Virus record (IMG/VR): IMGVR_UViG_3300034050_000451
Coordinates: 206,866 to 270,865 of that record
Length of the DNA: 64,000 bases
Strand: one strand, 5' to 3'
Shown here piece after piece: positions 326 through 26,457 of the stretch. The notes below the pieces were generated by a model. The model was not told the DNA's origin and ran no database searches. It saw only the letters and a program-made list of their open reading frames with translations. A program made the position numbers and the translations under genes. Position 1 is the first letter of the stretch, and each line of letters begins with the position of its first letter.

Positions 326-1183
326 TTATTTTGCTAGTTTCTTTTCATTATATGAATCTACGAATTTCTCCATCAACTCAGCCGGTATTGGTTCGTTAGC
401 CAATTTCTCAGCAATCATCTGAGCGAATTTCTCCATATATACATCTTCATTCTCTTCTTCATCTCCAGCAAATATTGCCGCTTTACCTACTCCTTTTAAA
501 ATCGTTTCACCTACTACGTGAGGAATAAACTCCATAGCAACGTGTTGACCGAATGCAGCAGCTCCGTGTGCTAATCCACCGGTTGCAGCTCCAAATAGAG
601 CAGTTGTTACAACTTTAATAGCTACTGCTTTTAAAGCCTTCTTTTGGTGGTCATTCATCTCTTCACCTTTAAATAGTGATTTAACTGCACCACCTGCAGT
701 TTTGAATTCTTCTACTTCACCTTTAGCGCCCTTTTTAACAGCTTCCCAAGCTCCTTTAGCTTTATCTGAAATTGCGTGTCCCCAACTTCTTCTTTCCTTA
801 GAACCTCCTTTATGTGAATCAGATTTAAAGAATTCTTTTTCTTCTTTGGCCCATCCTTTGATTTTATCACTAATTCTACCAACTGCTTCCTTAGCCTTAG
901 CAGCCAATCCCTTTTCGTAATCGGTTTTCTCAGCCGGTTCCTTTGTAGGTTCTTCGGCCGCTTTTGGAGTTTCTCCTCCAGCTTTCTTATCAGCTGGTTT
1001 ATCAAATATATTTACTTTAGGTTTAGGAGGTGCACCAGCATCTCCCTTTTCAGGTTCTTCATAATCGCCGGATTTAATTGCAGCATCTCTGGTTTCTCTT
1101 GAACCAAAGTTTACTACCTTACCCGTTTTTGTTGATTTTGCTACGAAGCTTTCTTCGTTCAACAAGTCCATTAATTTTATCAT
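326..1183 (-). CDS. Putative virion internal protein with MIKL leader; Lys/Ala/Glu-rich with a C-terminal hydrophobic segment
   Basis: Starts MIKLMDLLNE; N-terminal module is paralogous to 21668..22648. Confidence 0.5.
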   Translation of the reverse strand: MIKLMDLLNEESFVAKSTKTGKVVNFGSRETRDAAIKSGDYEEPEKGDAGAPPKPKVNIFDKPADKKAGGETPKAAEEPTKEPAEKTDYEKGLAAKAKEAVGRISDKIKGWAKEEKEFFKSDSHKGGSKERRSWGHAISDKAKGAWEAVKKGAKGEVEEFKTAGGAVKSLFKGEEMNDHQKKALKAVAIKVVTTALFGAATGGLAHGAAAFGQHVAMEFIPHVVGETILKGVGKAAIFAGDEEENEDVYMEKFAQMIAEKLANEPIPAELMEKFVDSYNEKKLAK

Positions 1184-1932
1184 TTCTTAATCAGATTAGA
1201 TTTTTTTAATATTCTAGCAGTTGCTACCCATTTTTTTCCAATTGGATTATAAAGTGGTTTTCTTAAGAACGCATCTACTGCTTGTTGTACTGGTCTATTT
1301 ACCGGTTTGTAAACGGTATTATCTACAATTACAAAGTTACCACTAAACATACCTTGGAATGCTCCTAAGTTATTTTGACAATCTTTCCAAATTTTGGTTA
1401 CCAACTCATCCGATAGAACTCTATCTCGGTTTTTATTTCTTTCCAATGCTACTTCCAATGATGTATTTACAAACACCATTGAACAATCATATCCTAATGA
1501 TTCAGCATGTTCCATTTTCTTTTTAATCTTAGATACCTCATCTCCGGTTCCATCGATAATCATACCCAATCTACCAGCTTCATAAAAAGCTCTTTGTTTA
1601 TCGGTAATCGCTTTTGCTTTTCCTCTAATTGAATTATCTCCCTTAGTGATTAAATCCCAAAGTTCCGGGTCATTCTTTTCAATGTTACCCAACTCCTTCA
1701 TATCAATACCATTATCTTTAAGACCCTTCTCAAATGCAGTATCAGAATTTACTAATTTCAATCCACCAGCAGATACCGATGAAAATGCAGATTTACCCAC
1801 TCCAAATATCTCTTTAGCAGTAAATGATTTCCCACTTCCAGGTCCTCCTGCCATAAATACACATTTTAAGATTCCCGGGTCATCAACACCCTCACTTAGA
1901 ATCCCTTTAATTATTTCCTTTAAACTTATCAT
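1180..1932 (-). CDS. P-loop kinase (zeta-toxin/AAA_33-like) with MISL leader
   Basis: GGPGSGKS Walker A, IIDGTG, RNKNRDR lid-like motif. Confidence 0.7.
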   Translation of the reverse strand: MISLKEIIKGILSEGVDDPGILKCVFMAGGPGSGKSFTAKEIFGVGKSAFSSVSAGGLKLVNSDTAFEKGLKDNGIDMKELGNIEKNDPELWDLITKGDNSIRGKAKAITDKQRAFYEAGRLGMIIDGTGDEVSKIKKKMEHAESLGYDCSMVFVNTSLEVALERNKNRDRVLSDELVTKIWKDCQNNLGAFQGMFSGNFVIVDNTVYKPVNRPVQQAVDAFLRKPLYNPIGKKWVATARILKKSNLIKK

Positions 1933-2345
1933 TATCTTATTTTATTTAAATTCTTTACTATTGAGGTTACTTCACTATTATCAAAATTATGTTCCGATGA
2001 TATTTGTGACCGGTTTATGGTTTTCCATATCGGAGTTCCATTTATAGTGATATCGGATAGTATATCGTTTTTACTTCTACATCCGTTATAATCACAATAC
2101 TTCCCACCATACAAAACACAAACGTGAACCATCGCTTTCGTTTCCGGTTCTATTATAGCTACATACTTACCTCTATTTCCTAAATACTTATTCAGACCAT
2201 CAGCAAATGTATAACATCCTCCACTCATATACCAATCTGTCCAATTGGTATCTTTTCTATATTGTTCTAATGTATCATCTAAATCCGATACACTTATCAC
2301 AACCTCATTTAGTACTTCATAGATAATTTCTTTTAAACTTATCAT
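1932..2345 (-). CDS. Small papain/transglutaminase-like Cys-His-Asp protein with MISL leader
   Basis: GGCYTFA...VHVCV...YCDYNG triad spacing. Confidence 0.45.
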   Translation of the reverse strand: MISLKEIIYEVLNEVVISVSDLDDTLEQYRKDTNWTDWYMSGGCYTFADGLNKYLGNRGKYVAIIEPETKAMVHVCVLYGGKYCDYNGCRSKNDILSDITINGTPIWKTINRSQISSEHNFDNSEVTSIVKNLNKIR

Positions 2346-2346
2346 A

Positions 2347-3117
2347 TTAATACTTTTTAATTTGCTTATAATCTAATATAGATATTGGTTTTACAATTAT
2401 TTCGTTCCAAAGTGAGGTTTTGTTCTCAGTACAATTCACTAAATCCGTACATAGATTATTCTCATTATCCGGGTATGAAAAACGGAATAAGTTAGCTGCC
2501 CGATTTCCTCTATCAGTTGCAAATGATTTTACATCTGATTTAAATGCGGCTACTAACTCTCCTCTTATCTTTACCAATATATTACTCTCCGGTCTAAAGA
2601 ACTCCTTTGCTTGGGTAGTAAACGTTGATATAGAAAAACTATACCCACTTCGGATACTATCTGCAAGGTTTCTGAATCCCTCCTCAGATGTCCAATGGTA
2701 CGTTACCACCTCAGAACCTACGTTACCATAAGTATCCTTAGTAAACGATTTATCCAATAGAATATAAGGTTCAATTGCTCCTCTACTATTAAAGAACGCA
2801 ATCCTATCATTGTTTATGTTCTTTATATAATCCCCAAACTCATCTCTGATTCCCCATATCCTATGGTTTACAAAATCTTCAATAAAGTCTAAAACGTTTT
2901 TCTTGGTCAAATCCCCATACAAATCGGTTTCAACCCATAGTTGATATCCAAAATAAGTATCTATAAGTTCCATCATCTTCGGGTCCGTAGGTAAAACCCC
3001 ACCCCTAGTATCGGAACCACCCTTTTGTAGGTCTAAAAAACGCTTAGAGATACGTTCCCACTCTCCAATAGTGTGGAACGAATCCTCCGGTTTTTGATAT
3101 CCTCTTACTTTGTACAT
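2347..3117 (-). CDS. Hypothetical protein, possible ADP-ribosyltransferase-like fold
   Basis: YHWT...ISTFT...WNEIIV pattern; class II motif upstream. Confidence 0.3.
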   Translation of the reverse strand: MYKVRGYQKPEDSFHTIGEWERISKRFLDLQKGGSDTRGGVLPTDPKMMELIDTYFGYQLWVETDLYGDLTKKNVLDFIEDFVNHRIWGIRDEFGDYIKNINNDRIAFFNSRGAIEPYILLDKSFTKDTYGNVGSEVVTYHWTSEEGFRNLADSIRSGYSFSISTFTTQAKEFFRPESNILVKIRGELVAAFKSDVKSFATDRGNRAANLFRFSYPDNENNLCTDLVNCTENKTSLWNEIIVKPISILDYKQIKKY

Positions 3118-3245
3118 AGACTCGAAATTGGGTTGTTACTTAACTCCCCTATAAATATGGATAATTTCCATTTTTGGTTGCTTCCCATATCCCTTCCCCA
3201 GCTTCTAATGTAAGAGATACTAACCTCTTCCAAAACCTTTTTAGT

Positions 3246-3455
3246 TTATCCCTCATATGGTATCTCCATCTGCCTATCTACTAAAGTTCGTTCGGTTTCA
3301 CCACTTTGACGGGAGTATATCGTTTTTCCCTTATCCGGGGATTCAAAGATTTTCTCCCCAGTTGTGGATTCTCTCCAATACGCTCTACGGATAACATTTC
3401 CCAACTCAGCATCGTTTGGGTATTTGTTGATTAACTCTATAATTTTATTGTCCAT
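3246..3455 (-). CDS. Small hypothetical phage protein
   Basis: ORF in co-directional run; PNDAELG and IFESPDKGKTIYSR motifs resemble conserved small phage proteins. Confidence 0.55.
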   Translation of the reverse strand: MDNKIIELINKYPNDAELGNVIRRAYWRESTTGEKIFESPDKGKTIYSRQSGETERTLVDRQMEIPYEG

Positions 3456-3656
3456 CCTTTTAAAAAATTTATTCTTAAGTAATACAATGTACTACATATC
3501 CCCTTATCCTTAAACTCCTTATACGTCTTTAACTTCTCATCGGTTTGAAGTAAATCCCTTTCCCATTTTGGTTGTATTCCCAAGCGGCTTTGTATTTCGT
3601 ATATAAATCTTTCTAATCTACTACGTTGTGGATTCGGATGTGCGGAGTTATTCATA
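3437..3656 (-). CDS. Small hypothetical protein (likely start MNNSAH)
   Basis: ORF track 3437..3724; the upstream extension is AT-rich and contains a promoter-like TATATTTG. Confidence 0.4.
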
Positions 3657-3733
3657 TAGTAATAAGTGTAAGGATAGCTAAATGTAATATTCAAATATAA
3701 GTATAAATATAACAAAACTATCAAAAAAATTAA

Positions 3734-3790
3734 GGTTGCGACTCACCCCCCACCGAATCGATGAAAAGGAGGTATCCCCTTAATCCCAAT
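3734..3790 (-). other. GC-rich structured intergenic element containing an anti-SD-like sequence GGATACCTCCTTTT
   Basis: ACCTCC/GGGGGT and CATCG/CGGTG stems; locally GC-rich in AT-rich DNA. Confidence 0.4.
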
Positions 3791-3904
3791 AACTAAATTT
3801 CATCTACACCATCTACATGCGTATCTCCATACTCATCATCGGTGTGGGGTTCGTTATTCCACTCTTCATTAAAATACTTAAAAGTTGGATATTTGATTTC
3901 CATC

Positions 3905-4099
3905 TTAAAATATATTAATTACAATTTTTGCTATTTGATTTTGTGATACCCGAATGGGTACTATTGTATCCCCTGTTATAGGGTTGATTAGAAGTCTACC
4001 ATCGTTCAACATTTTGTTTTGGGCCGCTGTAAGTGATTCCAATATCTTTTTAGTGATAAGTGGGTCTTGTACTTCTGCCTCTGATAGTAAACCAAACAT
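3905..4099 (-). CDS. Hypothetical protein
   Basis: ORF track, co-directional. Confidence 0.45.
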   Translation of the reverse strand: MFGLLSEAEVQDPLITKKILESLTAAQNKMLNDGRLLINPITGDTIVPIRVSQNQIAKIVINIF

Positions 4100-4110
4100 A
4101 ATCTATTCTC

Positions 4111-4386
4111 CTAATAAGATAATTTAACCCCTACAATGCATTCTACCAATCCTTCGTACTTTGAATCAATTGGTGTGATTGATGTTATAATCCATTTTGA
4201 TTTTTGAAAATTAAGTACTCCTCCTACCGATAATACCGGTCCACCTTCAAAGTCAAACATTACCGTTTCACCGGAATCATTTGTTGATGTTCTTTGAAAT
4301 TGAGATTCCCCAGTAATCCTAAGTCTATTGGTATCTAATTTTTCGATAACTCTCTCTAATCCGTATCTGCTTTTAATCATTTCCAT
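4111..4386 (-). CDS. Hypothetical protein
   Basis: ORF track; ATACTTAT motif 4 nt upstream of ATG. Confidence 0.6.
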   Translation of the reverse strand: MEMIKSRYGLERVIEKLDTNRLRITGESQFQRTSTNDSGETVMFDFEGGPVLSVGGVLNFQKSKWIITSITPIDSKYEGLVECIVGVKLSY

Positions 4387-4570
4387 ATCAATAAGTATTA
4401 TAGTTGATATTCTTTTAGTTTTTCATTATAAATAGTATCCAAAGATTCAATTAAATCCTTGTCATCATACATATTACTAAAATTATTTATTAATTTTTTC
4501 ACACTTCCATTTGCCATTGCAGCGTATTGTGCAGTTTTAATTGTATTTAGTACTTTAAAGTATGCTTCTT

Positions 4571-5032
4571 TCATATGATTCCTCTAATTTGTAATTCTGA
4601 TTTAGTGTAACCAAGCTTACATTGTTTTTTATACCACCAATATAAATCTTCAGTAGTACCCTTACCCCGCTTTCTTTCCATAGCCTTCTCCCATAAATCC
4701 TTTTCGAATTCTTCGGCTAATGCTCTTTGTAATTCTCGCAATCGTTTATTCTCATCAGTATTACCTACTTCATCTAACTTAAGAGCTTTTACTCTTTTAA
4801 TTCTACCAGCATACAATGCCTCCATCTCTAATTGAGCTGGGTCTGAAATAAGTGCATTCTTTTTAGTCAATTCATAAGCTTCAATCGCAAGTTCTCTATT
4901 ATACTTTGCCTCATCAAAATAAGGTGAAACTTCAAAATCACCATTTTGAATCCTTCGGAGTAATGGAGCTGATTTTGGTAGTGGCTTCTTTCTAAGTTTA
5001 GATGTGTACCAACGGAATTTATTATATGCCAT
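4571..5032 (-). CDS. Conserved hypothetical phage protein
   Basis: 153-aa ORF, FRWY...RIQNGDF. Confidence 0.6.
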   Translation of the reverse strand: MAYNKFRWYTSKLRKKPLPKSAPLLRRIQNGDFEVSPYFDEAKYNRELAIEAYELTKKNALISDPAQLEMEALYAGRIKRVKALKLDEVGNTDENKRLRELQRALAEEFEKDLWEKAMERKRGKGTTEDLYWWYKKQCKLGYTKSELQIRGII

Positions 5033-5033
5033 A

Positions 5034-5339
5034 TTACAATTTTTGGATTTGTTCTAATATATCAGTAACTTCTGTTTCTGATAAATACCCAATAACATCA
5101 TCTGTAATTGGAGTATCATATGTCAAATCACCATCAGTACCTAATACTGCTAATTCATATTTTCCCCTATCACCACCATAGGTATATGGGGTCTTAACTA
5201 CACTAGCACCATATCCATTTTCAAATATGATACGACTCATCACACCTCCCATTCCGGCAGTATGTGGTTTAAATTCTAAATCTTTGAATGTTTTCATCTT
5301 TATCTTTTTTACGAATGCTTGTATATTATAGTAATTCAT
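5034..5339 (-). CDS. Conserved small phage protein (start may be MKTFKDL)
   Basis: FENGYGASVV...YGG...YELAVL...DVIGYL motif typical of a widespread phage family. Confidence 0.65.
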   Translation of the reverse strand: MNYYNIQAFVKKIKMKTFKDLEFKPHTAGMGGVMSRIIFENGYGASVVKTPYTYGGDRGKYELAVLGTDGDLTYDTPITDDVIGYLSETEVTDILEQIQKL

Positions 5340-5343
5340 ATTT

Positions 5344-5375
5344 CAAATATACAAAAAATAATTCAAATAACCTAA
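5344..5375 (-). promoter_or_regulatory. Class I (Bacteroidota primary-sigma-type) promoter
   Basis: TATATTTG (-7 element) on minus strand with TTAG about 20 nt upstream. Confidence 0.55.
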
Positions 5376-5504
5376 TTTCTTTCCAAAATCTTTTTTAATT
5401 GTGATTCTTTCAATAGTTTCTTTGGTTCTTGTTTTTTGGATTTGTCCTCTTCCAATGGAATTCGATAGTTCTTTACTAACTTTTCCATCCAATCTTTGGT
5501 GTCT

Positions 5505-6599
5505 TTACTCATACTCATTTCTATTTATTTTTATAACATAAGGAAATCGGGGAATTCCATCCGGTGTTAGGTTAAAGTACTTAACAGTTGCTTCTTTACC
5601 TATCAAGGAATCTTTGTTTTCTAAAATCTCAGCTGTTTCAGCAAATGTCCCCTTTACATTTGATTTGAATCGCTTTCCATCTTTGGTATTAAATACCATA
5701 TATCCACAAGTGCCGGTTCGGTTACCCTCACCTTCACATATATCTAAAATCGTATATTCCTCATCTACAAAGGATTTATGCTTCAAAAGGTACTTACTTC
5801 GTTTATTCTCATAAAGTCCACCAGTACGAAGCATTTGCCCCTCATAACCCTGCTCAACATATTTACCATACAAATCCATAACACCAGCCTCATCCCTAAC
5901 AGGGTGGGTTGTTACAAACTCACAAGTAGATGGTAACTTAACACCATACAATGCTTTGAATCTTTCAACAAATTCACCACCATGTGATGGGAAATCATAG
6001 ATATGGTATTTGATTACTTTTTTACATTCCTCTAAATCAGATGGAGTTGGCTTTGTTTTTTTCACCAACGATACAATCTTATTGAAATCATTAGCGAACT
6101 TATCAGCGTACAATTCTCCATCAAATATTAGATTTGGATTCTCATCAAACAAATATTTCATTGATTCAAAAATGTGAGGTGCTGATACAATTGGTTTACC
6201 ATTCCTACTAAACATACCATCTTTGGTAAGGATACATCGGATACCATCTAATTTTGGTTGAGAGAATATTGGGTATTCAATTTTATCTTTGTAATCTTCC
6301 CACTTGGCCGCCAACATAGGTTCAAAGTATTGTTTAGTATCAATGTTATTAATACTTTCAAAATAACCACTCTCTAACTTTTTAGTTCTCTTAGCTATTG
6401 CTTCTTTAAGAGCTTGTTCGTTATCAGTAGTACCATTTGCTTTACCTTCATTTTTACCATACACAACTGTCCATGTGTTTGTGGTAATTACTCCACCACA
6501 TTGTCCACTATGAGTTCTGTATTTATTATCGGATACTTCAATTGTCCACTCTTGAGTTGCACCTGTCTTAGTTTTTTTGTAAATCGTTTCTAATTTCAT
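5505..6599 (-). CDS. ATP-dependent DNA ligase
   Basis: PMLA, SQPKLDGIRC (motif I), FDGELY, EGQMLR, LLKHK, PRFP. Confidence 0.95.
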   Translation of the reverse strand: MKLETIYKKTKTGATQEWTIEVSDNKYRTHSGQCGGVITTNTWTVVYGKNEGKANGTTDNEQALKEAIAKRTKKLESGYFESINNIDTKQYFEPMLAAKWEDYKDKIEYPIFSQPKLDGIRCILTKDGMFSRNGKPIVSAPHIFESMKYLFDENPNLIFDGELYADKFANDFNKIVSLVKKTKPTPSDLEECKKVIKYHIYDFPSHGGEFVERFKALYGVKLPSTCEFVTTHPVRDEAGVMDLYGKYVEQGYEGQMLRTGGLYENKRSKYLLKHKSFVDEEYTILDICEGEGNRTGTCGYMVFNTKDGKRFKSNVKGTFAETAEILENKDSLIGKEATVKYFNLTPDGIPRFPYVIKINRNEYE

Positions 6600-6931
6600 C
6601 GTAATATGAATTTTAATACATTGTATTTTATTTTGTGGAATTTATTGAATGTTCGAGGTGACCATACTTTGTGGTCTTGCAACTCATCCAATTGCTTTGC
6701 TAAAGTATTCCTTAAAAAGAACAAATCACCCTCCCATCTAAATCTAAATCGGTTTGTGTAATTTGGTAAGAAACATAAAAATTTAAATAAATAATAAGAA
6801 TGCAATCCCTTTGTTATTTTCAGAATTTCAACACCCCATTGTTCATAAGGTCCGTTGATGTATATATTAAGTAATTTTATATTTAAATTGAACTTTCGCA
6901 TTTTCCAATCTATTGTTTGGAGTATTTTCAT
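6596..6931 (-). CDS. Hypothetical protein
   Basis: ORF track, overlaps ligase start. Confidence 0.5.
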   Translation of the reverse strand: MKILQTIDWKMRKFNLNIKLLNIYINGPYEQWGVEILKITKGLHSYYLFKFLCFLPNYTNRFRFRWEGDLFFLRNTLAKQLDELQDHKVWSPRTFNKFHKIKYNVLKFILR

Positions 6932-6955
6932 AGTTAATCTTTTTTTTTGAATTTA

Positions 6956-6985
6956 GAGATTCAGGGGGGTATTACCCCCCATCTC
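6956..6985. other. Strong GC hairpin GAGAT-(TCA)-GGGGGGT-ATT-ACCCCCC-ATCTC downstream of the MoxR gene
   Basis: Inverted repeat seen directly; no U-tract follows on the minus strand. Confidence 0.6.
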
Positions 6986-7003
6986 ATTTATAATTGATTA
7001 ACC

Positions 7004-8212
7004 TTAGAACATTGGGATTTCATCTACTAACTCTTCTTTTTGTTCGGTAAAAAGAGCTTCTGCTGATGTATCTTTAACATATTTTTGAACCAGTTGTTTC
7101 ACATAAGTTCTTTCAGAATCTACACCACCATCATTAGAGAAGAATGGGAAGATTGAAATTTCAGCTGATTCGAATAAATCGAATCCATCATAAATTAATC
7201 CAGCCATTTCAACACTAGCTCTCGTCGATACCATAGCGGTAACTTTACCAGAATCACTCATCGATTGAGTTCGAGTGTGGTGAGCGATTTCAGCGATTGC
7301 TTTCAAATCATAATCATTAACCTCAGGGAACATAAACTTTAACAATCCAAATTCCTGCTCATCATTTAGAACATCCATTTCGATAGTTACGAAACGGTCT
7401 AAGATAGCCCTATCGATTACCCTAGTCGAAGTATATTCAGAACCTATGTTAGCGGTAGCGATAAAGGTAACACCTTCAGCCACTTTAACAATTGGTGAAC
7501 CTTCAGCCTCATCCAAACGTAAGTAACGTTGTCCACCATCTAAAACGGTCATCAAAATGTTCCAAGCATCAGGGTGAGCTCTACTCAACTCATCTAATAG
7601 AATCACAGCGTTTGGAGTTTTAATTGCTTTAACGAATGCCGATTCAGCGAAGAAAGTTCCTTTGTTTTTATCAAAGTGAGTATTACCAATCAAAGTAGCA
7701 CGAGGGTCTTGCGTTGCTCCTAAGTTGAAGTAGAAATCAGGTCGGTCAAGTGCTTTAACCAATGCTTTAGCTGCCATTGTTTTACCACAACCAGCAGGTC
7801 CAGTCATCATAATGTTTTTAGCTCTAACAGCTGAACGAACTAAGTATTTCCACTTTAGAGGTGTCATCACCAATTCAATTGGTTTCAAATCAATTGAACT
7901 ATTGTGAATGAAATCTTTGATTGCGTTATGGTCACCTTTATCTTCAAATTGAACACCACCATTATCGGTATTCATTGGGGAAACTAAGTTATTATAAACT
8001 TCCATTCCCACTTTTCGGAAAACCTTCTTACCATTCTTTTGAACGAATGCCTGAAGAGCCAATCCCTGCTCAAATGCATCTTTACGAGTACCGGTTCCGA
8101 TACCCATTGTACCAACTTTTTGACCTTTAGTGTCAATTAACTTAAATGAGTTACCAAAAGCTTCTACTTTGTAAACCTCATTTCCTACGAATCCAATTTT
8201 TAAATCTTTCAT
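7004..8212 (-). CDS. MoxR/CbbQ/CobS-like AAA+ ATPase
   Basis: GPAGCGKT Walker A, LLDELSR Walker B, ATAN, DRAILDRF. Confidence 0.9.
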   Translation of the reverse strand: MKDLKIGFVGNEVYKVEAFGNSFKLIDTKGQKVGTMGIGTGTRKDAFEQGLALQAFVQKNGKKVFRKVGMEVYNNLVSPMNTDNGGVQFEDKGDHNAIKDFIHNSSIDLKPIELVMTPLKWKYLVRSAVRAKNIMMTGPAGCGKTMAAKALVKALDRPDFYFNLGATQDPRATLIGNTHFDKNKGTFFAESAFVKAIKTPNAVILLDELSRAHPDAWNILMTVLDGGQRYLRLDEAEGSPIVKVAEGVTFIATANIGSEYTSTRVIDRAILDRFVTIEMDVLNDEQEFGLLKFMFPEVNDYDLKAIAEIAHHTRTQSMSDSGKVTAMVSTRASVEMAGLIYDGFDLFESAEISIFPFFSNDGGVDSERTYVKQLVQKYVKDTSAEALFTEQKEELVDEIPMF

Positions 8213-8223
8213 TTTTATTTATT

Positions 8224-8291
8224 TTAGGGTTTTAATTAATTACTCTCTCAATTACCTGTCTAATATACGAACAATTTCTGATATAAACAAG
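8224..8291 (-). repeat. Early promoter/leader cassette type A, copy 1
   Basis: 8235-8271 identical (37 nt) to 11022-11058; includes TATATTAG -7 element and AAAACCCTAAAA leader. Confidence 0.85.
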
Positions 8292-8317
8292 CTTTTTGCC
8301 AATTATTTTTGCTTTTT

Positions 8318-8542
8318 TTAATAATAAAATCGACTATAATAACCTAATGTACCAGTATCCGAATCTGCGTTGTCTATAAACCCAAATCCTTTGTAATTAT
8401 TGGTATTGAATAGGATTCTTTCAATGGTGGTGGCAATGCCAGCCTTAAATGCCACTGTAGCGAACTCATCGGTTCGTTTTAGTTGTTCATTAGCCCAATC
8501 CAACATAGTACTAACTTCAATCGTTTTTTTACTTTTAGCCAT
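8318..8542 (-). CDS. Small early hypothetical protein
   Basis: ORF track, own promoter cassette. Confidence 0.6.
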   Translation of the reverse strand: MAKSKKTIEVSTMLDWANEQLKRTDEFATVAFKAGIATTIERILFNTNNYKGFGFIDNADSDTGTLGYYSRFYY

Positions 8543-8544
8543 AA

Positions 8545-8622: not shown

Positions 8623-8664
8623 CCTTTTTCTAATTATTTTCAATAAAGTTATTAACAATTTGAA

Positions 8665-10782: not shown

Positions 10783-10785
10783 ATT

Positions 10786-17444: not shown

Positions 17445-17496
17445 ATACTATTTTAAGTTTCTACTATATGTATATAAATATAGGTTATTTGATTTT

Positions 17497-17967: not shown

Positions 17968-18007
17968 AACTTTTATTTATTTTACAAATATACGAAATTA
18001 ATTTGGA

Positions 18008-20518: not shown

Positions 20519-20521
20519 ATC

Positions 20522-20531
20522 TATAAATATT
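20522..20531 (-). promoter_or_regulatory. Class II motif ATATTTAT (putative late promoter), 4 nt before ATG
   Basis: Same motif recurs near 3151, 4391, 16164, 17473, 24960, 26485, 26831, 41803, 62955. Confidence 0.55.
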
Positions 20532-20545
20532 CTCTTTTTGAGATA

Positions 20546-20812
20546 TTACTTTTTATTTTTAACTTTCTTTTCCGGAACCTTTATTGTTGTATCTCCATTG
20601 GATATTTTATCCAATATAGTTAATAATTCTTGCCTACGAATAGCATCTTTCATTTGCTTTCTCCTTTTAGTAGTTGGTTTAGTAAATTCCTTCCTATCTC
20701 TCAACTCCAAAAGATGACCTGATTCAAATGTTTTGTTTTTGAATATCTTAAGAGCTTTATTTATATCACCATTTTTAACATAAACTGTAACCAAAGATTT
20801 TTCTTTACTCAT
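20546..20812 (-). CDS. rpsU: Phage-encoded ribosomal protein bS21
   Basis: V.VKNGDINKALKIFK...LELRDRKEFTKPTTKRR. Confidence 0.85.
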   Translation of the reverse strand: MSKEKSLVTVYVKNGDINKALKIFKNKTFESGHLLELRDRKEFTKPTTKRRKQMKDAIRRQELLTILDKISNGDTTIKVPEKKVKNKK

Positions 20813-20816
20813 TATA

Positions 20817-21671
20817 TCAATTAATATAATTAGTTAATTCAAAGTTTCCACTAGCCATACCATATACTGAAATATGTAGTGCCTTTCTTTGGGGTTTACC
20901 ATTTCTCAATAATCCAACAGTAAATGAATTAGTCTTACCAATAGATGGTCTTGAACGAGAATACTTACCTCCCATTGCTATTTGTGTTTGCCAATCATTC
21001 TCATCAATTTCATACCCTTTTTTCATAGCGTATGCTTTAGCAGCTGATGCCGCATCGGTAAATGATTTGAAATAAGTTTCGTTTGATTCTGACATCAAAT
21101 CAGTTAATTTTATCATCGTATTTTCGGTTTTTCTATTTTGTGTTATTTTAGCAGATACAAACATTACAACTGCAATTATAAAAAATATAAAAAATGCGTA
21201 CATTCCCAACTTAGCCCATAAAGAACCTTCAGCTGCTTGTGCACCATATACATCTTCCATTATTTTCATTACCTCAGGTTCTGCTAATCTTTGGATTTCA
21301 GAATAATACCATTGTGAAAATGATGCTGTTGCGTATTGAGTCCAACTACCAGCAGTTAATACAGCTGATATAATTGCTCCCAATGCTGATTTACTTCCTA
21401 CATTAACTGAAAATTTATTAATTGTACTTCGTAAATCCTCATTCATTCCAGTTTGCTTTGAAAAAACCGATTGAGCTTTATTCATTGCTGCCTTTGTATC
21501 CGGTTTATCTTTACTAATTTTATCTAAGTTAAGATGCTTTACCGCATTTCCAGCTTTCTTATCAGCTATCCTTATTGCTAAATTCCTAATCTTAGAAATA
21601 GCATCACCCAACCCCTCATTTAAGTTGGGTTGGGTGTTTTTATTTTCAGTTAACTGATTTAATTTTATCAT
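20817..21671 (-). CDS. Two-module leader-bearing protein (membrane module + soluble module with a second internal MIKL leader)
   Basis: MIKLNQLTE at start; MIKLTDLMSE internally (ATG 21116). Confidence 0.6.
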   Translation of the reverse strand: MIKLNQLTENKNTQPNLNEGLGDAISKIRNLAIRIADKKAGNAVKHLNLDKISKDKPDTKAAMNKAQSVFSKQTGMNEDLRSTINKFSVNVGSKSALGAIISAVLTAGSWTQYATASFSQWYYSEIQRLAEPEVMKIMEDVYGAQAAEGSLWAKLGMYAFFIFFIIAVVMFVSAKITQNRKTENTMIKLTDLMSESNETYFKSFTDAASAAKAYAMKKGYEIDENDWQTQIAMGGKYSRSRPSIGKTNSFTVGLLRNGKPQRKALHISVYGMASGNFELTNYIN

Positions 21672-22648
21672 TTCATTAAGTTCTTAAGTGAAGTTCTATT
21701 AACTTTACCTTCTTTAATTACTGATTGTATCTTATCTGCTAATTTATGAAATCCGTTCATTCTTAATTCAAATGCAATTCCATCAATTGCGGTATCTCCA
21801 CTCCATCCGGCTGCTTGTGATGCGGCTACCCCCAAATCTTGTGCATCATCATCAGGTGAACTATATACTGAATCATATTTAGCTCTGATTACATCCATCT
21901 TTTCTCTGAACTTAGGGTCTGATGGGTTGGGGTAATCTGGCTTCTCTGCTAATTCAGGTTTCCCTTCTAATGCTGCTACTAACTCTCTTGCTTCACTATG
22001 GAAGTTTGAATCAGTAAGTGCCGCAACTGCTGCTTGAGCCATTTTCTTTTGATACTCAGTTTTATCCATCTTATCAGATGAAATTCCCATCTTTTGAGCT
22101 ATCTTTCTAACTTCTTTATTTACCGTTGGGTCACCTTTTCTTGGTGCTTTTGGTTCAGCTGCTTTTGGTTCATCACTATCAGGTGCAAATGGATTCCATA
22201 AACCTCTACTATCTACCTCTTTTTGAGTAGATGGTGCAACTTTAGCATCTTTTTGATGTGGATACTTTGTTGGGTTATATGGTTCTAATTCAGATGTATT
22301 TACATTACCATCTGCATCGGTTTTTGTTTCACCTCTTTCATCTGCCATTCTTACAATACCAACTGATTTAGTTCTCGTATTATAAACAACTTTATCAACA
22401 GCTAAACTAGCAGGAGTTGCTTTGGGTGTATCCGATTTTGGTTCATCTTTAGATGGTGTATTAAAGATATTCACACCAGACTTAGCATCACCACCCTTTG
22501 ATGTTTTTGCAGTTGGGTCCTCATGTGAACCAGCCTTAATAGCTTTATCATAAGAATCTTTTGATTTGAAGTGTACTAACTTTCCACTTTCCTTACTCTT
22601 AGCAGTGAAATCACTAGCCTCATTTATCAATTGTTTTAATTGTATCAT
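21668..22648 (-). CDS. Putative virion internal protein with MIQL leader
   Basis: MIQLKQLINE; paralog module of 326..1183. Confidence 0.55.
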   Translation of the reverse strand: MIQLKQLINEASDFTAKSKESGKLVHFKSKDSYDKAIKAGSHEDPTAKTSKGGDAKSGVNIFNTPSKDEPKSDTPKATPASLAVDKVVYNTRTKSVGIVRMADERGETKTDADGNVNTSELEPYNPTKYPHQKDAKVAPSTQKEVDSRGLWNPFAPDSDEPKAAEPKAPRKGDPTVNKEVRKIAQKMGISSDKMDKTEYQKKMAQAAVAALTDSNFHSEARELVAALEGKPELAEKPDYPNPSDPKFREKMDVIRAKYDSVYSSPDDDAQDLGVAASQAAGWSGDTAIDGIAFELRMNGFHKLADKIQSVIKEGKVNRTSLKNLMK

Positions 22649-22663
22649 AATTATATTTTGTTA

Positions 22664-22939
22664 TTAAAATCCTATACTAACTCGTTTACCCAAATCTTCT
22701 TCAACCCAACGAACTTTTGCTGCTATTAATTTTTTCATAGTATCTACATCAAATCGATATGCACCATGATAATTTTGTAATTTTATAGCAACTACAAAAC
22801 CATGTATACCATCCCAAATCATTTCGGCCTTTCCACCGATTATTGATTCGAATGCTTTAATTTGCTTTTGTTGAATTGGAGTTAATTCACTTAATTCAAC
22901 AACAGATGCTTCGTTTATTAATTTACTTAATCGTATCAT
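22664..22939 (-). CDS. Putative virion internal protein (start MIRLSKLINE)
   Basis: Leader motif identifies ATG at 22939 rather than 22999. Confidence 0.55.
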   Translation of the reverse strand: MIRLSKLINEASVVELSELTPIQQKQIKAFESIIGGKAEMIWDGIHGFVVAIKLQNYHGAYRFDVDTMKKLIAAKVRWVEEDLGKRVSIGF

Positions 22940-22940
22940 A

Positions 22941-23465
22941 TTATTTTGAAAATTTTGTATATTTGAAATTACTATCGGTAAATCTTCTATCCACCCCATG
23001 TTTCTTATAAAACATATTTAATGTACTCACCAAATCTCTTACAAATGATGTATATCTTTCTTTAGATTCTGGTGTTACTACATTAACTATATCTCTTGGA
23101 ATTAAATCAGTTGCCACATTTTGTATTGACATTTGAACTAACTCATCTATACTTTCAGTAACTCCACTTAGTTTTAAAAATTCAGTTGGATTATATTTTA
23201 CATTTTCATAATCAAACTTTTTCATCATTTTAGCAGCTATCTCTTTTCTATTTTCGGTATCACTTACCATAGAAACAATTTCAGCTACACCAACTACCAT
23301 TTCTCTATCATTATCAGGTTGAGTTACTACTTCTTCCTCTTCTCTGATTTGTTGTGGAGTTTTGAATGGTGGAATATCTTTAAATGTATAAACTTTTCCA
23401 AGCTCAACTTTCATACCCTTCCATTCTATTTCCGATAATATGGTTTTTAATTTAGATGAGCTCAT
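22941..23465 (-). CDS. Putative virion internal protein
   Basis: SKLKTILSE leader-like start; internal IREE, VTE sites. Confidence 0.5.
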   Translation of the reverse strand: MSSSKLKTILSEIEWKGMKVELGKVYTFKDIPPFKTPQQIREEEEVVTQPDNDREMVVGVAEIVSMVSDTENRKEIAAKMMKKFDYENVKYNPTEFLKLSGVTESIDELVQMSIQNVATDLIPRDIVNVVTPESKERYTSFVRDLVSTLNMFYKKHGVDRRFTDSNFKYTKFSK

Positions 23466-24652
23466 TACTTTAATAATTTAAATGCCATTGATTGCATACC
23501 CATTAATCCAGTACTTACGAATTTATCTTTGTTTGATTGTTGCTTAAGTGCATCATATACTTTAGTTATTGCTGATGCTGAGTACAAATCAACTCTTACT
23601 TTTTTACCACTCTTTGGGTCTACTAAAACTTTATTTGAACTAGTCTTAACTATATCCTTTAATTGGGTTATAATAGTTGGTTCGGTGTTTTCTGTTAACT
23701 TAGAACCACCACACCCACAACCACAACCACATCCGGCTCCTTCATTTACAGAACTACCACCAATCAATTCATTATATGAACTCATATCGATTGTACCCTT
23801 TTCCTTTGTAAGCTTAATAGCTCTTTCAGCAAAATCATGCAAATCCATATCAGTTTTAGCATCTTCTCTTGCAAATTCCAATGTTCTAATAAACAATGGT
23901 ATATCCATAGTGATTGTATCAATTACATCACCTACTTCAGTTAACCCTTGCTCTTTGTTTTTCATATCAGCGAATGCTTGAGCTTCAGGTTGTGTTTCAA
24001 ATCCCTTTACTCTAATATCACCTTCCCATACAGCCCATTTTTCAATTGGGTCTTTACAAGGTTTTACAACGTATTTATCGGATGGGTCTCCGCTATGGTC
24101 TTCGTTATTTATTTTCTTACCAGCTTTAACTGCATCTTTATGTGCATCAGAATTACCATGTGCAGGTTTCTCACCTCTCGCTCTTTTAGCTCGGATGTTT
24201 GCCCAAAGACCAGGTTTTTCTTCGTTTATTGATTCAAATTTCAATCCAAATCCAGTAGCCTCATCTCTTAACTCATCCCAATCACGACCACCATTACTTC
24301 TAATATAATCAACTGCACCTTTAAAATTAGAAAATCCTAATTTCTTTAGTATTTTGTTATTACGATACAACGCTCTTAAAAAATCTCTAACACCAGCTGA
24401 TGATAAAGAAATTTCATTAATCATTTCTTCAACAGTTTGAGGAAGTGCATCTGCCACTCTTTCCAATTCATCAGATTCAGTACCTTCACTAACTGATTTA
24501 TAGGTATCTTCCAACCATTTCATCGCATCTCTATTTTTAGGGAAGTCTTTGAATTCTTTGTAAAATTCCTTAACGAATTCTTTAAATGATGATGCCTCTT
24601 TAGCCATCAAATCTACATCACTCATCGAACCCTCTTTTATTGATTTTTTCAT
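23465..24652 (-). CDS. Multi-module putative internal head polyprotein with CGCGCGCG motif
   Basis: Short modules separated by IKE, VSE, INE, INE, LTE, VNE, LTE. Confidence 0.5.
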   Translation of the reverse strand: MKKSIKEGSMSDVDLMAKEASSFKEFVKEFYKEFKDFPKNRDAMKWLEDTYKSVSEGTESDELERVADALPQTVEEMINEISLSSAGVRDFLRALYRNNKILKKLGFSNFKGAVDYIRSNGGRDWDELRDEATGFGLKFESINEEKPGLWANIRAKRARGEKPAHGNSDAHKDAVKAGKKINNEDHSGDPSDKYVVKPCKDPIEKWAVWEGDIRVKGFETQPEAQAFADMKNKEQGLTEVGDVIDTITMDIPLFIRTLEFAREDAKTDMDLHDFAERAIKLTKEKGTIDMSSYNELIGGSSVNEGAGCGCGCGCGGSKLTENTEPTIITQLKDIVKTSSNKVLVDPKSGKKVRVDLYSASAITKVYDALKQQSNKDKFVSTGLMGMQSMAFKLLK

Positions 24653-24658
24653 AATCTT

Positions 24659-24940
24659 CTATAATTTCTTTAATAAGCTGTACATATCTATTTTAAACCC
24701 ATATCCAGCACCTTTATAATCAAAATCAATATCAATTGGTAATTTTAATTTTGATTCCAAATAACTTTGTAATGCCTTTGGAATAACTAATGCTTCATTT
24801 GAATCAGATATTATATTTTGTAAAACATCCAAATCTTTTGAAGTTTTTGCAATACAAGCAATCCCACCATCTTTAATGTTGGGATGTACACCAAATTCAG
24901 CTGAATATGTATTACCTTTTAGTTTAAAGTTTAATTTCAT
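24659..24940 (-). CDS. Hypothetical protein
   Basis: ORF track; class II motif at 24960. Confidence 0.6.
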   Translation of the reverse strand: MKLNFKLKGNTYSAEFGVHPNIKDGGIACIAKTSKDLDVLQNIISDSNEALVIPKALQSYLESKLKLPIDIDFDYKGAGYGFKIDMYSLLKKL

Positions 24941-24974
24941 AGTTGTACTTTGTTATTCTTATAAATATATCTTT

Positions 24975-25505
24975 TTAATGTTTTATATGTTGTACTCTCC
25001 ATCTAACATCCTTACCTCTTAACATTGCTTTGGTTGCCTCTACATTCTTTTCAGAATCATCCGCAAAGTAAACATCATCATAACCTTCGTTATCGATTTT
25101 ATCTTCTATCCAATCTGCTTTATCTTTCGGGTTGTTAGATGCTAATGCAACTACAAATATTTTATTAGAATTAATACCAATATCCTTTAGATATTGTTTA
25201 ATAGGTTGATATGCTGCTCTTGCAGTTAGGATGTAAACACCATCTCCACCACTACTACCCATTACTCTACGAAGTACATTCGTAATCTTTTTTATTTCTT
25301 GAGGATTCTGAACTTTTTGAAAATCAGAAAAATCAAATTCATCACCAGGTTTTTCATTATAAACAGCGTATTGACCTGGAGTTAATTTTGATTTTTTTCC
25401 ATTAGAATGCGTTATGTATATAAATGATGTTGTTTTTACTAATGTATCATCAAAATCAAATATTCTTAACTTCTTAGATTCCACTAATAAACTCCTTGCT
25501 ATCAT
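24975..25505 (-). CDS. HAD-superfamily phosphatase (likely start MIARSLLVE)
   Basis: FDFDDTL, ILTAR, K, FADDSEKN; promoter at 25531 supports the shorter start. Confidence 0.8.
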   Translation of the reverse strand: MIARSLLVESKKLRIFDFDDTLVKTTSFIYITHSNGKKSKLTPGQYAVYNEKPGDEFDFSDFQKVQNPQEIKKITNVLRRVMGSSGGDGVYILTARAAYQPIKQYLKDIGINSNKIFVVALASNNPKDKADWIEDKIDNEGYDDVYFADDSEKNVEATKAMLRGKDVRWRVQHIKH

Positions 25506-25566
25506 ATTTTCTTGTTTGATTGTTAACATACAAATATACAATTTTTTTCTGATATATCCTAATAAA

Positions 25567-25884
25567 TTAGGAGCTTTGTTTCAGAAATTGAGTATTTAAT
25601 TCTAACAATTTTTTATTTTCCATTTCAAGATATTGAACTTTAATAGTTAATTCTGCCAAATCTCTAGTAAGATTTAGTATCTTATCCCTAAGTTCATCTT
25701 TTTCTTGACTACTTCTTTCTAACAATTGTTCCAATCTATCAATTCTCTTAGAGCAATCATGTTTAATAAATTCATCTTCCTTTTCCTGTCTTTCGGCTTT
25801 TTTCTCATAAAACCTCCAAGCTCCAGCTGAACCTAATACTGTTATTAGTGTTATTATTACTGCGTAAATTGATTCTGATTGCAT
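25567..25884 (-). CDS. TM-anchored coiled-coil protein (possible lysis component)
   Basis: N-terminal TM then heptad repeats. Confidence 0.5.
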   Translation of the reverse strand: MQSESIYAVIITLITVLGSAGAWRFYEKKAERQEKEDEFIKHDCSKRIDRLEQLLERSSQEKDELRDKILNLTRDLAELTIKVQYLEMENKKLLELNTQFLKQSS

Positions 25885-25896
25885 TGTTAGTTATTT

Positions 25897-26457
25897 TTAA
25901 TTATTTTTTTCTAATTCTGACCTTAAGTAGTGTTTAGCCGCAATCATATCTTCTTTAGCATTAACTATCTTAGCTTGCCACCAATGTGGAAAATCAACTT
26001 CTTCACCAGTACTATCAAACTGAGCCAACATCTCACCTAATTCTTCAGCATATCTTTCGATAATACTTAAATCAGCTCTTAACATACCCGGTTCATCATC
26101 CTGATGACCTAAATCCGTATCTTCGGAAACTACCAATTCATCATCTTTACCTAAATCCTTTATGTATCTTTCCTCCATATCATACAAATCGATAAGATTT
26201 TTGTGTAGTGCATTTATTTTTTTGGTGATGTCTAAAATTGGTTTAACCAATGTATTTCTTTTATTTACATCCGTTTCACTATTAACTTTAGCAGCATATG
26301 CTCCACCAAATTTTTGTTTTCTTTCTGCAGTTAATTTTTCTATTTGTTTCTTAACTGCTTCAATTTTTAGAAATAATTTAGGAATACCCTCACTCATTAA
26401 TTTTGATGCGGTTCTTTTCCCATAATTCTCTACAATGTATTTTTCAACTGATTTCAT
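25897..26457 (-). CDS. Putative virion internal protein
   Basis: YIVE / LMSE / VVSE sites; DLGHQDDEPGM...PHWWQAKI module. Confidence 0.5.
   Translation of the reverse strand: MKSVEKYIVENYGKRTASKLMSEGIPKLFLKIEAVKKQIEKLTAERKQKFGGAYAAKVNSETDVNKRNTLVKPILDITKKINALHKNLIDLYDMEERYIKDLGKDDELVVSEDTDLGHQDDEPGMLRADLSIIERYAEELGEMLAQFDSTGEEVDFPHWWQAKIVNAKEDMIAAKHYLRSELEKNN

What the first reader, a model, noticed from the sequence alone, without database searches (positions are those of the whole stretch)
326..26457. Shared N-terminal MIxLxxL(L/I)xE leader on unrelated cargo proteins: putative capsid-targeting/protease-cleavage tag
Seen: MIKLMDLLNE (326..1183), MISLKEIIKGILSE (1180..1932), MISLKEIIYEVLNE (1932..2345), MIKLNQLTE and internal MIKLTDLMSE (20817..21671), MIQLKQLINE (21668..22648), MIRLSKLINE (22664..22939), SKLKTILSE (22941..23465), and weaker MIARSLLVE (HAD) and MKSVEKYIVE. 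The downstream domains are unrelated (kinase, Cys-His-Asp enzyme, membrane module, phosphatase). Established: T4 internal proteins carry a short capsid-targeting sequence removed by prohead protease gp21 after (L/I)xE. Inference: a modular tag that loads a diverse enzyme arsenal into the head for injection; potentially usable for cargo engineering.
Basis: partly seen in the sequence, partly recalled or inferred. Interest (0 to 1): 0.75.

Follow-up and report, generated by a model that had tools for sequence, protein, structure and literature searches.

The report
T4-style capsid-loading leader peptide
A 271-kb T4-like phage, probably of aquatic Bacteroidota, puts the same roughly ten-residue leader (M-I-x-L-x-x-L/I-L/I-x-E) on at least seven otherwise unrelated proteins, and the evidence indicates it is this lineage's version of the T4 capsid-targeting and protease-cleavage tag, so it extends a known mechanism and is not a new one.

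Summary
Six window genes, one internal site and one gene outside the window carry MIxLxx[LI][LIM]xE. This is the largest N-terminal similarity class in the genome, ahead of signal peptides. A pattern taken from T4 mutagenesis (hydrophobic at 4, 7 and 8, Glu at 10) hits 8 of 339 N-termini against about 1 expected.

- The genome encodes a T4 gp21-type (S77) prohead protease, gp22 and gp23.
- The leader has the same length and key positions as T4 IPII/IPIII (MKTYQEFIAE) and gp24 (MAKINELLRE).
- In relatives, the orthologues of window genes 20546-22939 lie inside the head module, between protease and scaffold.
- In 23 kinase orthologues the leader varies from 12 to 42 residues. Glu at P1 and I/L/V/M at P3 are invariant, directly before an invariant mature start.
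- Modules that carry a leader in one genome are fused internally in another, with [LIVM]xE kept at the junction.
- Both window clusters lie downstream of a late-type promoter motif.

Cargos include a PNK/zeta-like kinase, a Cys-His-Asp papain-fold enzyme and a membrane protein. Cleavage, packaging and injection are untested. Verdict: new member of a known kind.

The parts
326..1183 (-). Leader protein 1 (285 aa), MIKLMDLLNE|ES... The first ~89 residues are paralogous to 21668-22648. The C-terminal half is homologous to an internal segment of the giant leader-tagged protein of relatives.
1180..1932 (-). Leader protein 2 (250 aa), MISLKEIIKGILSE|GVDDPG... The cargo is a P-loop kinase, polynucleotide-kinase/zeta-toxin-like.
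   Evidence: Pfam AAA_33 4e-10. AF2 pLDDT 85 with residues 1-12 below 50. Foldseek top hit CthPnkp kinase, E 4e-7. 23 orthologous leaders with invariant E at P1.
1932..2345 (-). Leader protein 3 (137 aa), MISLKEIIYE|VLNE|V... The cargo is a YunG-like protein with a probable Cys-His-Asp papain/transglutaminase-like fold.
   Evidence: invariant C44, H74, D85; pLDDT 90; Z 6.1-6.7 to protein-glutaminase, SseI and NAT
3702..3711 (-). Class-B (late-type) promoter motif TATATTTATA heading the run of genes 3655 -> 326, which contains leader cluster 1.
20546..20812 (-). Ribosomal protein bS21 homologue. It has no leader and is syntenic with the leader genes. In relatives it lies in the head module.
   Evidence: TIGR00030 45.5 bits
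20817..21671 (-). Leader protein 4 (284 aa), a fusion of two leader-tagged modules. Module 1: MIKLNQLTE| followed by a module with a transmembrane segment (~155-175). Module 2: internal MIKLTDLMSE| (21087-21116) followed by a 99-aa module that is a separate leader-tagged gene in relatives.
21668..22648 (-). Leader protein 5 (326 aa), MIQLKQLINE|AS... It has no known domain. Its orthologues sit between the prohead protease and the scaffold in relatives.
22664..22939 (-). Leader protein 6 (91 aa), MIRLSKLINE|ASVV... The mature part equals the C-terminal half of the gene after the protease in relatives, where the junction reads TLNE|ASEI or LLKE|ASEI.
22941..23465 (-). Probable leader protein 7 (174 aa), with the longer variant MSSSKLKTILSE|IE...
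24960..24969 (-). Class-B (late-type) promoter motif TATATTTATA, 29 nt upstream of 24659-24940. It heads the run of genes 24940 -> 18008, which contains leader cluster 2.
24975..25505 (-). HAD-type phosphatase with a doubtful leader, MIARSLLVE|. A class-A (early, host-type) promoter lies directly upstream.
25897..26457 (-). Possible leader protein (186 aa), MKSVEKYIVE|N... A near-class-B motif (TATATTTATT) lies 36 nt upstream. Its homologue in G002 adjoins that genome's leader cluster.

Best explanation
The MIxLxx[LI][LIM]xE leader is this phage lineage's capsid-targeting sequence and prohead-protease propeptide.

Proposed course of events:
1. The tagged genes are transcribed late, from TATATTTATA promoters.
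2. The short amphipathic N-terminal helix (hydrophobic at 4, 7 and 8) takes the pre-protein into the scaffolding core of the assembling prohead.
3. Once the shell closes, the gp21-type S77 protease cuts after the Glu (P1) that follows L/I/M at P3. This frees the mature cargo inside the head and destroys the leader.
4. The same [LIVM]-x-E site serves as a linker between modules in fused or polyprotein forms.
5. The cargos stay with the DNA and probably enter the host at infection. They include a PNK/zeta-like kinase, a Cys-His-Asp papain-fold enzyme, a membrane-segment protein and several proteins of unknown fold.

Shown: the motif and its non-randomness, the protease and head genes, synteny, conservation boundaries, junction retention, promoter association and cargo folds. 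Inferred: binding to the core, cleavage, residence in the virion and ejection.
For: (1) An S77 protease lies at G000 78016-78603 (89.5 bits). It is 32% identical to T4 gp21 across the GELxHP and SSRGxGS motifs. gp23 is present.

(2) T4 IPII/IPIII start MKTYQEFIAE|A and T4 gp24 starts MAKINELLRE|S. T4 genetics assign residues 4 and 7 to targeting and 8 and 10 to processing, and ten residues suffice (PMC9026906). The window leaders conserve exactly L4, L/I7, L/I/M8 and E10.

(3) The motif is non-random: 8 of 339 against about 1 expected, and it is the largest N-terminal class in the genome.

(4) The cargos share nothing beyond the leader, apart from one paralogous pair.

(5) In the kinase family there are 23 distinct leaders of 12-42 aa. 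P1 is E in 23/23, P3 is I/L/V/M in 23/23, and the mature start GVDDPG is found in 22/23. Long leaders hold extra [LI]xE sites.

(6) In relatives L047, L049, L051 and L078, the orthologues of window genes lie between protease and scaffold, among other leader genes.

(7) Of 18 fusion-junction contexts, 10 keep [LIVMF]xE within one residue, against 6.7% expected. They fall into about six module families by my grouping.

(8) The class-B motif occurs 18 times on the coding strand and once on the other. It precedes sheath, baseplate hub, an endolysin-like gene and the head module. It is the nearest upstream promoter motif for 6 of 7 strict leader genes, against 112 of 322 genes overall (Fisher p = 0.008).

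(9) AF2 gives the kinase leader residues 1-12 pLDDT below 50, with the fold starting near residue 20.

(10) Positions 7, 8 and 10 use synonymous codons freely (GAA 12, GAG 7), so selection acts on the peptide.

(11) Two complete relatives, G001 and G002, carry about 10 leader genes each, with partly different cargos.
Against: - There is no direct evidence of cleavage, of the proteins being in virions, or of ejection. No cultured isolate or proteome exists for this clade in the searched literature.
- The protease-leader complex prediction gave no answer.
- No RNA run holds this DNA, so late transcription rests on motif distribution alone.
- Codons 2 and 4 are biased towards ATA and TTA. Part of the 'MIxL' conservation may therefore be a nucleotide-level constraint from translation initiation or ATGA overlap.
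- One strict member (G000 145362) and the HAD gene are nearest to early-type promoters.
- In G002 the promoter association is not significant.
- Some fusion junctions lack the site, for example the YTHIGY module.
Confidence: 0.78

Rival explanations
1. The leader is only a protease-removable propeptide. It keeps potentially harmful enzymes inactive, or marks processing sites, and it does not itself direct the protein into the capsid. Packaging would depend on other parts of each protein.
For: The best-conserved feature across orthologues is the cleavage-type junction [ILVM]-x-E|, not the upstream residues. Internal junction sites exist without a full leader. In T4 the processing determinants (8, 10) and the targeting determinants (4, 7) are separable.
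Against: Within each genome, positions 4 and 7 are as conserved as 8 and 10 across unrelated cargos. That is not needed for cleavage alone. The T4 precedent shows that ten such residues suffice for targeting. Very small cargos of 60-100 aa have little else that could carry a signal.
Confidence: 0.12
2. The shared N-terminus reflects nucleotide-level or translational constraints: an AT-rich start region, ATGA stop/start overlap, and good initiation in an organism without Shine-Dalgarno sequences. Alternatively it is a generic amphipathic helix spread by local duplication. Either way it has no role in head assembly.
For: Codon 2 is ATA in 14 of 19 leaders and codon 4 is TTA in 18 of 19, well above genome usage of 33% and 57%. 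Two of the genes start in ATGA overlaps. The leader genes are clustered, as tandem duplication would give.
Against: Positions 7, 8 and 10 vary synonymously while the residue class is fixed. Only about 7 of 339 genes have the leader although all share the same composition. Leaders of orthologues differ widely in length and sequence yet always end in [ILVM]xE|. The site persists at internal fusion junctions, where translation initiation is irrelevant. Orthologues lie in the head module.
Confidence: 0.05
3. The leader targets the proteins elsewhere, for example to the cell membrane, a secretion route, or a phage replication or assembly compartment, and not to the prohead core.
For: One tagged protein has a transmembrane segment. 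No direct localisation data exist.
Against: The leader is 9-14 residues long with acidic and polar positions and has no hydrophobic core. True signal peptides form a separate class in the same genome. The head-module synteny and the match to the T4 CTS and gp24 propeptides point to the prohead.
Confidence: 0.05

Closest known systems
T4 capsid-targeting sequence (CTS) of internal proteins IPI/IPII/IPIII (MKTYQEFIAE), removed by prohead protease gp21 (Mullaney & Black 1996; reviews PMC9026906, PMC3012670)
   Same: - A ten-residue N-terminal leader, hydrophobic at 4, 7 and 8 with Glu at 10, followed by a small residue.
- Attached to proteins with unrelated mature parts.
- The genome has a gp21-type S77 protease, gp22 and gp23.
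- The tagged genes lie partly outside the head module, in variable clusters.
- The cargo set differs between related phages.
   Different: - No sequence homology of any cargo to T4 IPs.
- The consensus is MI[KRQS]L..[LI][LI].E, not MKTYQEFIAE.
- More tagged genes: at least 7 here and about 10 in relatives.
- The cargos include recognisable enzymes and a membrane protein, not small basic proteins.
- Leaders recur internally as linkers in fused genes and in a 1,490-aa multi-domain protein.
- The host is probably Bacteroidota; the phage is a 'far-T4' jumbo phage.
- Nothing has been shown experimentally.
T4 gp24 vertex-protein propeptide (MAKINELLRE|S) and other gp21 substrates (gp22, gp67, gp68, Alt, gp21 itself)
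   Same: The gp24 propeptide is the closest T4 sequence match to MIKLMDLLNE: M1, K3, I/L4, L7, L8 and E10. This phage's protease starts MKSLIIE|T, like T4 gp21's MNEPQLLIE|T. This phage's head-module proteins also start with helices that end in [LIV]xE.
   Different: gp24 is a shell protein, not an internal cargo. No gp24 paralogue with this leader was identified here.
Propeptide processing of ejection and inner-body proteins in giant phages phiKZ, 201phi2-1 and SPN3US (PMC5694885, PMC7411985)
   Same: - A jumbo genome with many head-internal proteins.
- Cleavage after Glu by a gp21-related protease.
- Paralogues that share identical N-termini.
- Extra sites within long propeptides.
- A processed head protein (SPN3US gp47) whose figure legend marks a predicted transmembrane helix.
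   Different: Those proteases use a small residue at P3 (A/S/G-x-E), and most of their propeptides exceed 100 residues. Here P3 is I/L/V/M in 23 of 23 kinase orthologues, and most leaders are 9-14 residues long, which is the T4 type.

Membership tests
T4-type CTS / gp21-processed head-internal proteins | The genome encodes a gp21-family (Peptidase S77) prohead protease together with gp22/gp23-type head genes. | tested here: met
   PF03420 89.5 bits at G000 78016-78603. 32% identity to T4 gp21. PF07068 252.8 bits. The gene order portal, core proteins, protease, scaffold, MCP is seen.
T4-type CTS / gp21-processed head-internal proteins | An N-terminal leader of about 10 residues with hydrophobic residues at 4 and 7 (targeting), a hydrophobic residue at 8 and Glu at 10 (processing). 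| tested here: met
   for the window. for the T4 sequences. for the genetic definition (PMC9026906).
T4-type CTS / gp21-processed head-internal proteins | The same leader sits on proteins whose mature parts are unrelated. | tested here: met
   All-against-all BLASTP found only one paralogous pair among the tagged proteins. The cargos have different Pfam hits and folds.
T4-type CTS / gp21-processed head-internal proteins | The leader is cleaved off after Glu by the prohead protease. | not testable with these tools
   Indirect support only: P1 is E and P3 is ILVM in 23 of 23 kinase orthologues with hypervariable leaders, and the site is kept at fusion junctions. The complex prediction gave no answer.
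T4-type CTS / gp21-processed head-internal proteins | The mature protein is present inside virions and is ejected with the DNA. | not testable with these tools
   No isolate or proteome was found. Head-module synteny in relatives is indirect support.
T4-type CTS / gp21-processed head-internal proteins | The tagged genes are expressed late, with the head genes. | tested here: inconclusive
   The motif TATATTTATA precedes sheath, baseplate hub and head-module genes and both leader clusters. Fisher p = 0.008 in G000, but not significant in G001 or G002. No RNA data exist.
phiKZ/SPN3US-type propeptides | Cleavage motif with a small residue at P3 (A/S/G-x-E). | tested here: not met
   P3 is I/L/V/M in all 23 kinase leaders and in all window leaders.
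Sec / lipoprotein signal peptides | A basic n-region followed by an uninterrupted hydrophobic core of 7 or more residues. | tested here: not met
   The leaders are 9-14 aa with polar or acidic residues at 5, 6, 9 and 10. Genuine signal peptides (MKKLLLL...) form a separate cluster.

The most novel reading that the evidence does not exclude
The leader and its [LIVM]-x-E site may work as a universal module boundary. On this reading a whole clade of aquatic jumbo far-T4 phages builds a combinatorial, rapidly exchanged set of capsid-delivered proteins: a kinase, a papain-fold deamidase- or transferase-like enzyme, membrane proteins and pieces of a 1,490-aa polyprotein. The same module could then be encoded either as a free tagged gene or as a segment of a polyprotein and still reach the head. 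That would make this a natural plug-and-play protein-delivery system, much larger and richer in enzymes than the T4 IP locus.
Probability: 0.35. Interest if true: 0.7.

Novelty: new member of a known kind. Interest (0 to 1): 0.5.

Why it matters
If confirmed, three things follow.
- The T4 capsid-targeting principle would be shown to be ancient and portable. It would be conserved in length and key positions between Escherichia phage T4 and jumbo phages of probably Bacteroidota hosts, whose major capsid proteins are only about 26% identical.
- The leader would give a simple sequence rule for predicting which 'hypothetical' proteins of uncultured T4-like phages are packaged, and possibly injected, as early-acting effectors. 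Candidate anti-defence enzymes would be among them.
- It would offer a short tag for loading foreign proteins into capsids of phages outside the Enterobacteria.

The junction-retention pattern also suggests how internal-protein repertoires evolve, by fusion and fission at protease sites.

Tried and rejected
- The complex prediction of the prohead protease with the first 40 residues of 22664-22939 gave 'no answer' (score 0.00). It is not used as evidence.
- The search for RNA runs found no run holding this DNA, only relatives matched by protein similarity. I made no read-laying or transcription-start analysis.
- Megablast against cultured phages found only a 36-bp match. The nearest cultured relatives have MCPs 51-52% identical (Flavobacterium phage immuto, Microcystis phage Mel-JY01).
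- A relaxed motif (^M.{0,12}h..hh.E) hits 33 ORFs, including the large terminase and bS21-like strands. I rejected it as non-specific.
- Foldseek on the 137-aa model gave nothing significant (best E 0.23). Only VIA-align gave a coherent but modest set of Cys-His-Asp superfamily matches (Z below 8).
- Pfam, PHROGs and NCBIfam gave nothing for 20817-21671, 21668-22648, 22664-22939 and 22941-23465. The Atlas gave nothing for 21668-22648.
- BLASTP of T4 IPII, IPIII, gp67, gp68 and gp22 against this proteome found no homologues.
- Pure paralogy was rejected as the explanation for the shared leader, because only one pair is similar beyond it.

Full report
**What the window is.** The window is the last 64 kb of a 270,865-bp IMG/VR virus record (CheckV 100% complete, about 32% GC). 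Nearly all of its genes lie on the minus strand. The genome encodes:
- a T4-type prohead protease (Pfam S77, 89.5 bits; G000 78016-78603);
- a gp23 major capsid protein (252.8 bits);
- a scaffold and a portal, in T4 order;
- a T4-like replication module, which lies inside the window.

The nearest cultured relatives by MCP are Flavobacterium phage vB_FspM_immuto (52%), Microcystis phage Mel-JY01 (51%) and Rhodothermus phage RM378 (39%). T4-group phages are below 30%. It is therefore a jumbo 'far-T4' phage, probably of an aquatic Bacteroidota host.

MIRLSKLINE is an internal ATG of ORF 22664-22999. It starts one base after the upstream stop codon, so it is the likely real start.

Only 6 of about 339 ORFs in the genome begin MIxL. 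One further member lies outside the window (G000 145362-145898, MIRLKSIMNE).

I took a pattern from T4 genetics, not from this window: hydrophobic at 4, 7 and 8, Glu at 10. It hits 8 of 339 N-termini against 0.8-1.0 expected (Poisson 1.6e-6).

An unbiased all-against-all comparison of residues 2-10 gives 21 strong pairs, against 4-5 at control offsets. The largest component is this leader group (6 genes). The second is ordinary signal peptides (5 genes).

**The cargos.** Beyond the leader, only 326-1183 and 21668-22648 are related (42% identity over about 89 residues). The cargos are:
- **1180-1932:** a P-loop kinase. Pfam AAA_33 scores 4e-10. The AF2 model has pLDDT 85. The best Foldseek matches are the Clostridium thermocellum polynucleotide kinase domain and zeta toxins.
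- **1932-2345:** a YunG-like protein. C44, H74 and D85 are invariant. The confident model (pLDDT 90) gives its best VIA-align matches, Z 6.1-6.7, almost entirely to Cys-His-Asp papain/transglutaminase-like enzymes: protein-glutaminase, SseI, arylamine N-acetyltransferase. These scores are modest. I treat the fold as a coherent lead and not as proof.
- **20817-21671:** carries a strong transmembrane segment.
- **24975-25505:** a weak HAD match.
- **The rest:** no recognisable domain.

**Match to T4.** I read the T4 sequences from NC_000866:
- IPII and IPIII both start MKTYQEFIAE|A.
- gp24 starts MAKINELLRE|S.
- gp21 starts MNEPQLLIE|T.

The review PMC9026906 reports that the first ten residues of IPIII suffice for packaging. 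It assigns residues 4 and 7 mainly to targeting and residues 8 and 10 to processing. The window leaders are ten residues long and conserve exactly L4, L/I7, L/I/M8 and E10. This phage's protease begins MKSLIIE|T. Its MCP has LLDE|A where the T4 gp23 cleavage site LTE|A aligns approximately.

**Comparative evidence.** IMG/VR holds many relatives. I fetched two complete ones, G001 (288,673 bp) and G002 (287,455 bp). Five results bear on the finding.

(i) *Kinase family.* There are 23 distinct leaders of 12-42 residues with little sequence in common. All end in [I/L/V/M]-x-E, and in 22 of 23 this sits directly before the otherwise invariant GVDDPGILKC. Long leaders contain further [LI]xE sites. 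The SPN3US work suggested that such extra sites help clear propeptide fragments from the capsid (PMC5694885).

(ii) *Synteny.* In L047, L049, L051 and L078, the orthologues of 21668-22648 and 22664-22939 and the bS21 gene 20546-20812 lie inside the head module, between protease and scaffold. They sit among further leader genes (MIKLSQILKE, MKLTQLLKE, MKLQSLIDE, MRLKNLLLE). The window's cluster 2 is therefore a displaced piece of the head module's variable region.

(iii) *Fusions.* Modules that carry a leader in one genome are fused internally in another, with the site kept at the junction. Examples are TLNE|ASEI, GMNE|ASPCW, GGGISE|RVENG, an internal KNISLKVLLE|AEDFKAKS, and the window's own internal MIKLTDLMSE|. 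Of 18 distinct junction contexts, 10 have [LIVMF]xE within one residue, against 6.7% expected. By my grouping they come from about six independent module families.

(iv) *Relatives' repertoires.* G001 and G002 carry about ten leader genes each, with the same consensus but partly different cargos.

(v) *Immuto.* In the cultured phage immuto, two adjacent genes upstream of the terminase share a different leader, MENFDLKKFLVE / MADNFNLRSFLTE.

**Expression.** Two promoter-like motifs dominate the intergenic DNA.
- **Class A, [GC]TATATTTG.** This matches the Bacteroidetes -7 box TAnnTTTG and precedes the replication genes.
- **Class B, TATATTTATA.** It occurs 18 times on the coding strand and once on the other. 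Sixteen of the coding-strand copies are intergenic, 29-58 nt upstream of a start codon. It precedes the tail sheath, the baseplate hub, an endolysin-like gene, the head module and the 1,490-aa leader-tagged protein.

Class-B copies lie at window 3702-3711, 17473-17482 and 24960-24969, so both leader clusters lie downstream of one. In G000, class B is the nearest upstream motif for 6 of 7 strict leader genes, against 112 of 322 genes overall (p = 0.008). In G001 it is the nearest motif for 8 of 11 regex hits; I judge two of the other three to be false positives. In G002 the test is uninformative. That class B is a late promoter is an inference. No RNA data exist for this phage.

**Peptide or nucleotide selection.** Positions 7, 8 and 10 use synonymous codons freely (GAA 12, GAG 7), so the residue class is what is conserved. 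Codons 2 and 4 are biased to ATA and TTA beyond genome usage, and two starts lie in ATGA overlaps. Some of the 'MIxL' may therefore also serve translation initiation.

**Structure.** AF2 gives residues 1-12 of the kinase pLDDT below 50. It shows a short helix at residues 4-10 and places the first strand of the fold at residue 23. In the 137-aa protein the first ten residues average pLDDT 62, against above 90 for the core. Both fit a detachable extension.

**Conclusion.** The best explanation (confidence about 0.78) is that the leader is a T4-type capsid-targeting and gp21-cleavage propeptide. It brings a variable set of proteins into the prohead, and the same cleavage site doubles as a linker between modules. 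Cleavage, residence in the virion and ejection are inferred by analogy, and the protease-leader complex prediction gave no answer.

The rivals are weaker. 'Propeptide only, no targeting' stays possible but does not account for the conservation of positions 4 and 7. A translational or compositional artefact is contradicted by the internal junctions and by the synonymous variation. Targeting to another destination is contradicted by the head-module synteny and by the separate signal-peptide class.

The phenomenon is known for T-even phages (PMC3012670, PMC9026906). I found no report of it for this clade. I file it as a new member of a known kind. Its larger, enzyme-bearing and fusion-prone cargo repertoire gives it moderate interest.

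Noticed in passing
window 20546-20812 (-): A phage-encoded ribosomal protein bS21 (TIGR00030, 45.5 bits against a cut-off of 28.95). It sits directly downstream of the leader genes. In relatives it lies inside the head module, between the leader genes and the scaffold gene.
   Followed up: partly
G000 86407-90879 (outside the window; locus L103): A 1,490-aa protein with the leader MSDLSKFLVE|SILLGE|, a cytidylyltransferase-like domain (26-163), a GNAT domain (722-786) and a class-B promoter 37 nt upstream. Pieces of it or of its orthologues occur as separate leader-tagged genes, and the C-terminal half of window 326-1183 matches residues 517-698 of the G001 orthologue. A conserved ...[LI]xxE|GGAY junction precedes its conserved C-terminal ~400 residues. 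It looks like a head-delivered polyprotein.
   Followed up: partly
window 23465-24652 (-): A 395-aa protein in the leader operon with a run GCGCGCGCGG (alternating Cys-Gly) in its C-terminal part. There is only a weak metallothionein-like Pfam hit. Function unknown.
   Followed up: no
whole genome; window 3702-3711, 17473-17482, 24960-24969 (class B); e.g. upstream of window 46424, 53044, 63441 (class A): There are two sharply distinct promoter-like motifs. TATATTTATA lies before structural genes. [GC]TATATTTG, a Bacteroidetes-type -7 box, lies before replication and early genes. Both are strongly biased to the coding strand (18:1 and 38:3).
   Followed up: partly
G000 902-7626, 84993-85412, 147860-148093: Five phage proteins start with classic signal or lipoprotein-like peptides (MKKLLLL...). 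They form the second-largest N-terminal class after the leader.
   Followed up: no
window 20817-21671 (-): This ORF is a fusion of two leader-tagged modules that are separate genes in relatives (G001 240916-241242, G002 87013-87339, L013 2215-2514). The second leader is kept intact at residue 186, directly after the transmembrane segment.
   Followed up: yes
window 26851-41559 (-): A long run of ORFs lies between leader cluster 2 and the replication module. One starts with a HAD-type MIKLIVFDLDG (29804-31171) and is a false positive for the leader. From their N-terminal sequences alone the others look to me like sugar- or glycosyl-transfer enzymes, but I did not scan them against any family library.
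   Followed up: no
L113 (Flavobacterium phage immuto) 4736-6036: Two adjacent genes upstream of the terminase share a different leader (MADNFNLRSFLTENKLT... / MENFDLKKFLVENKLT...) on different cargos. This suggests each lineage has its own leader variant, and it offers a cultured system for testing.
   Followed up: partly
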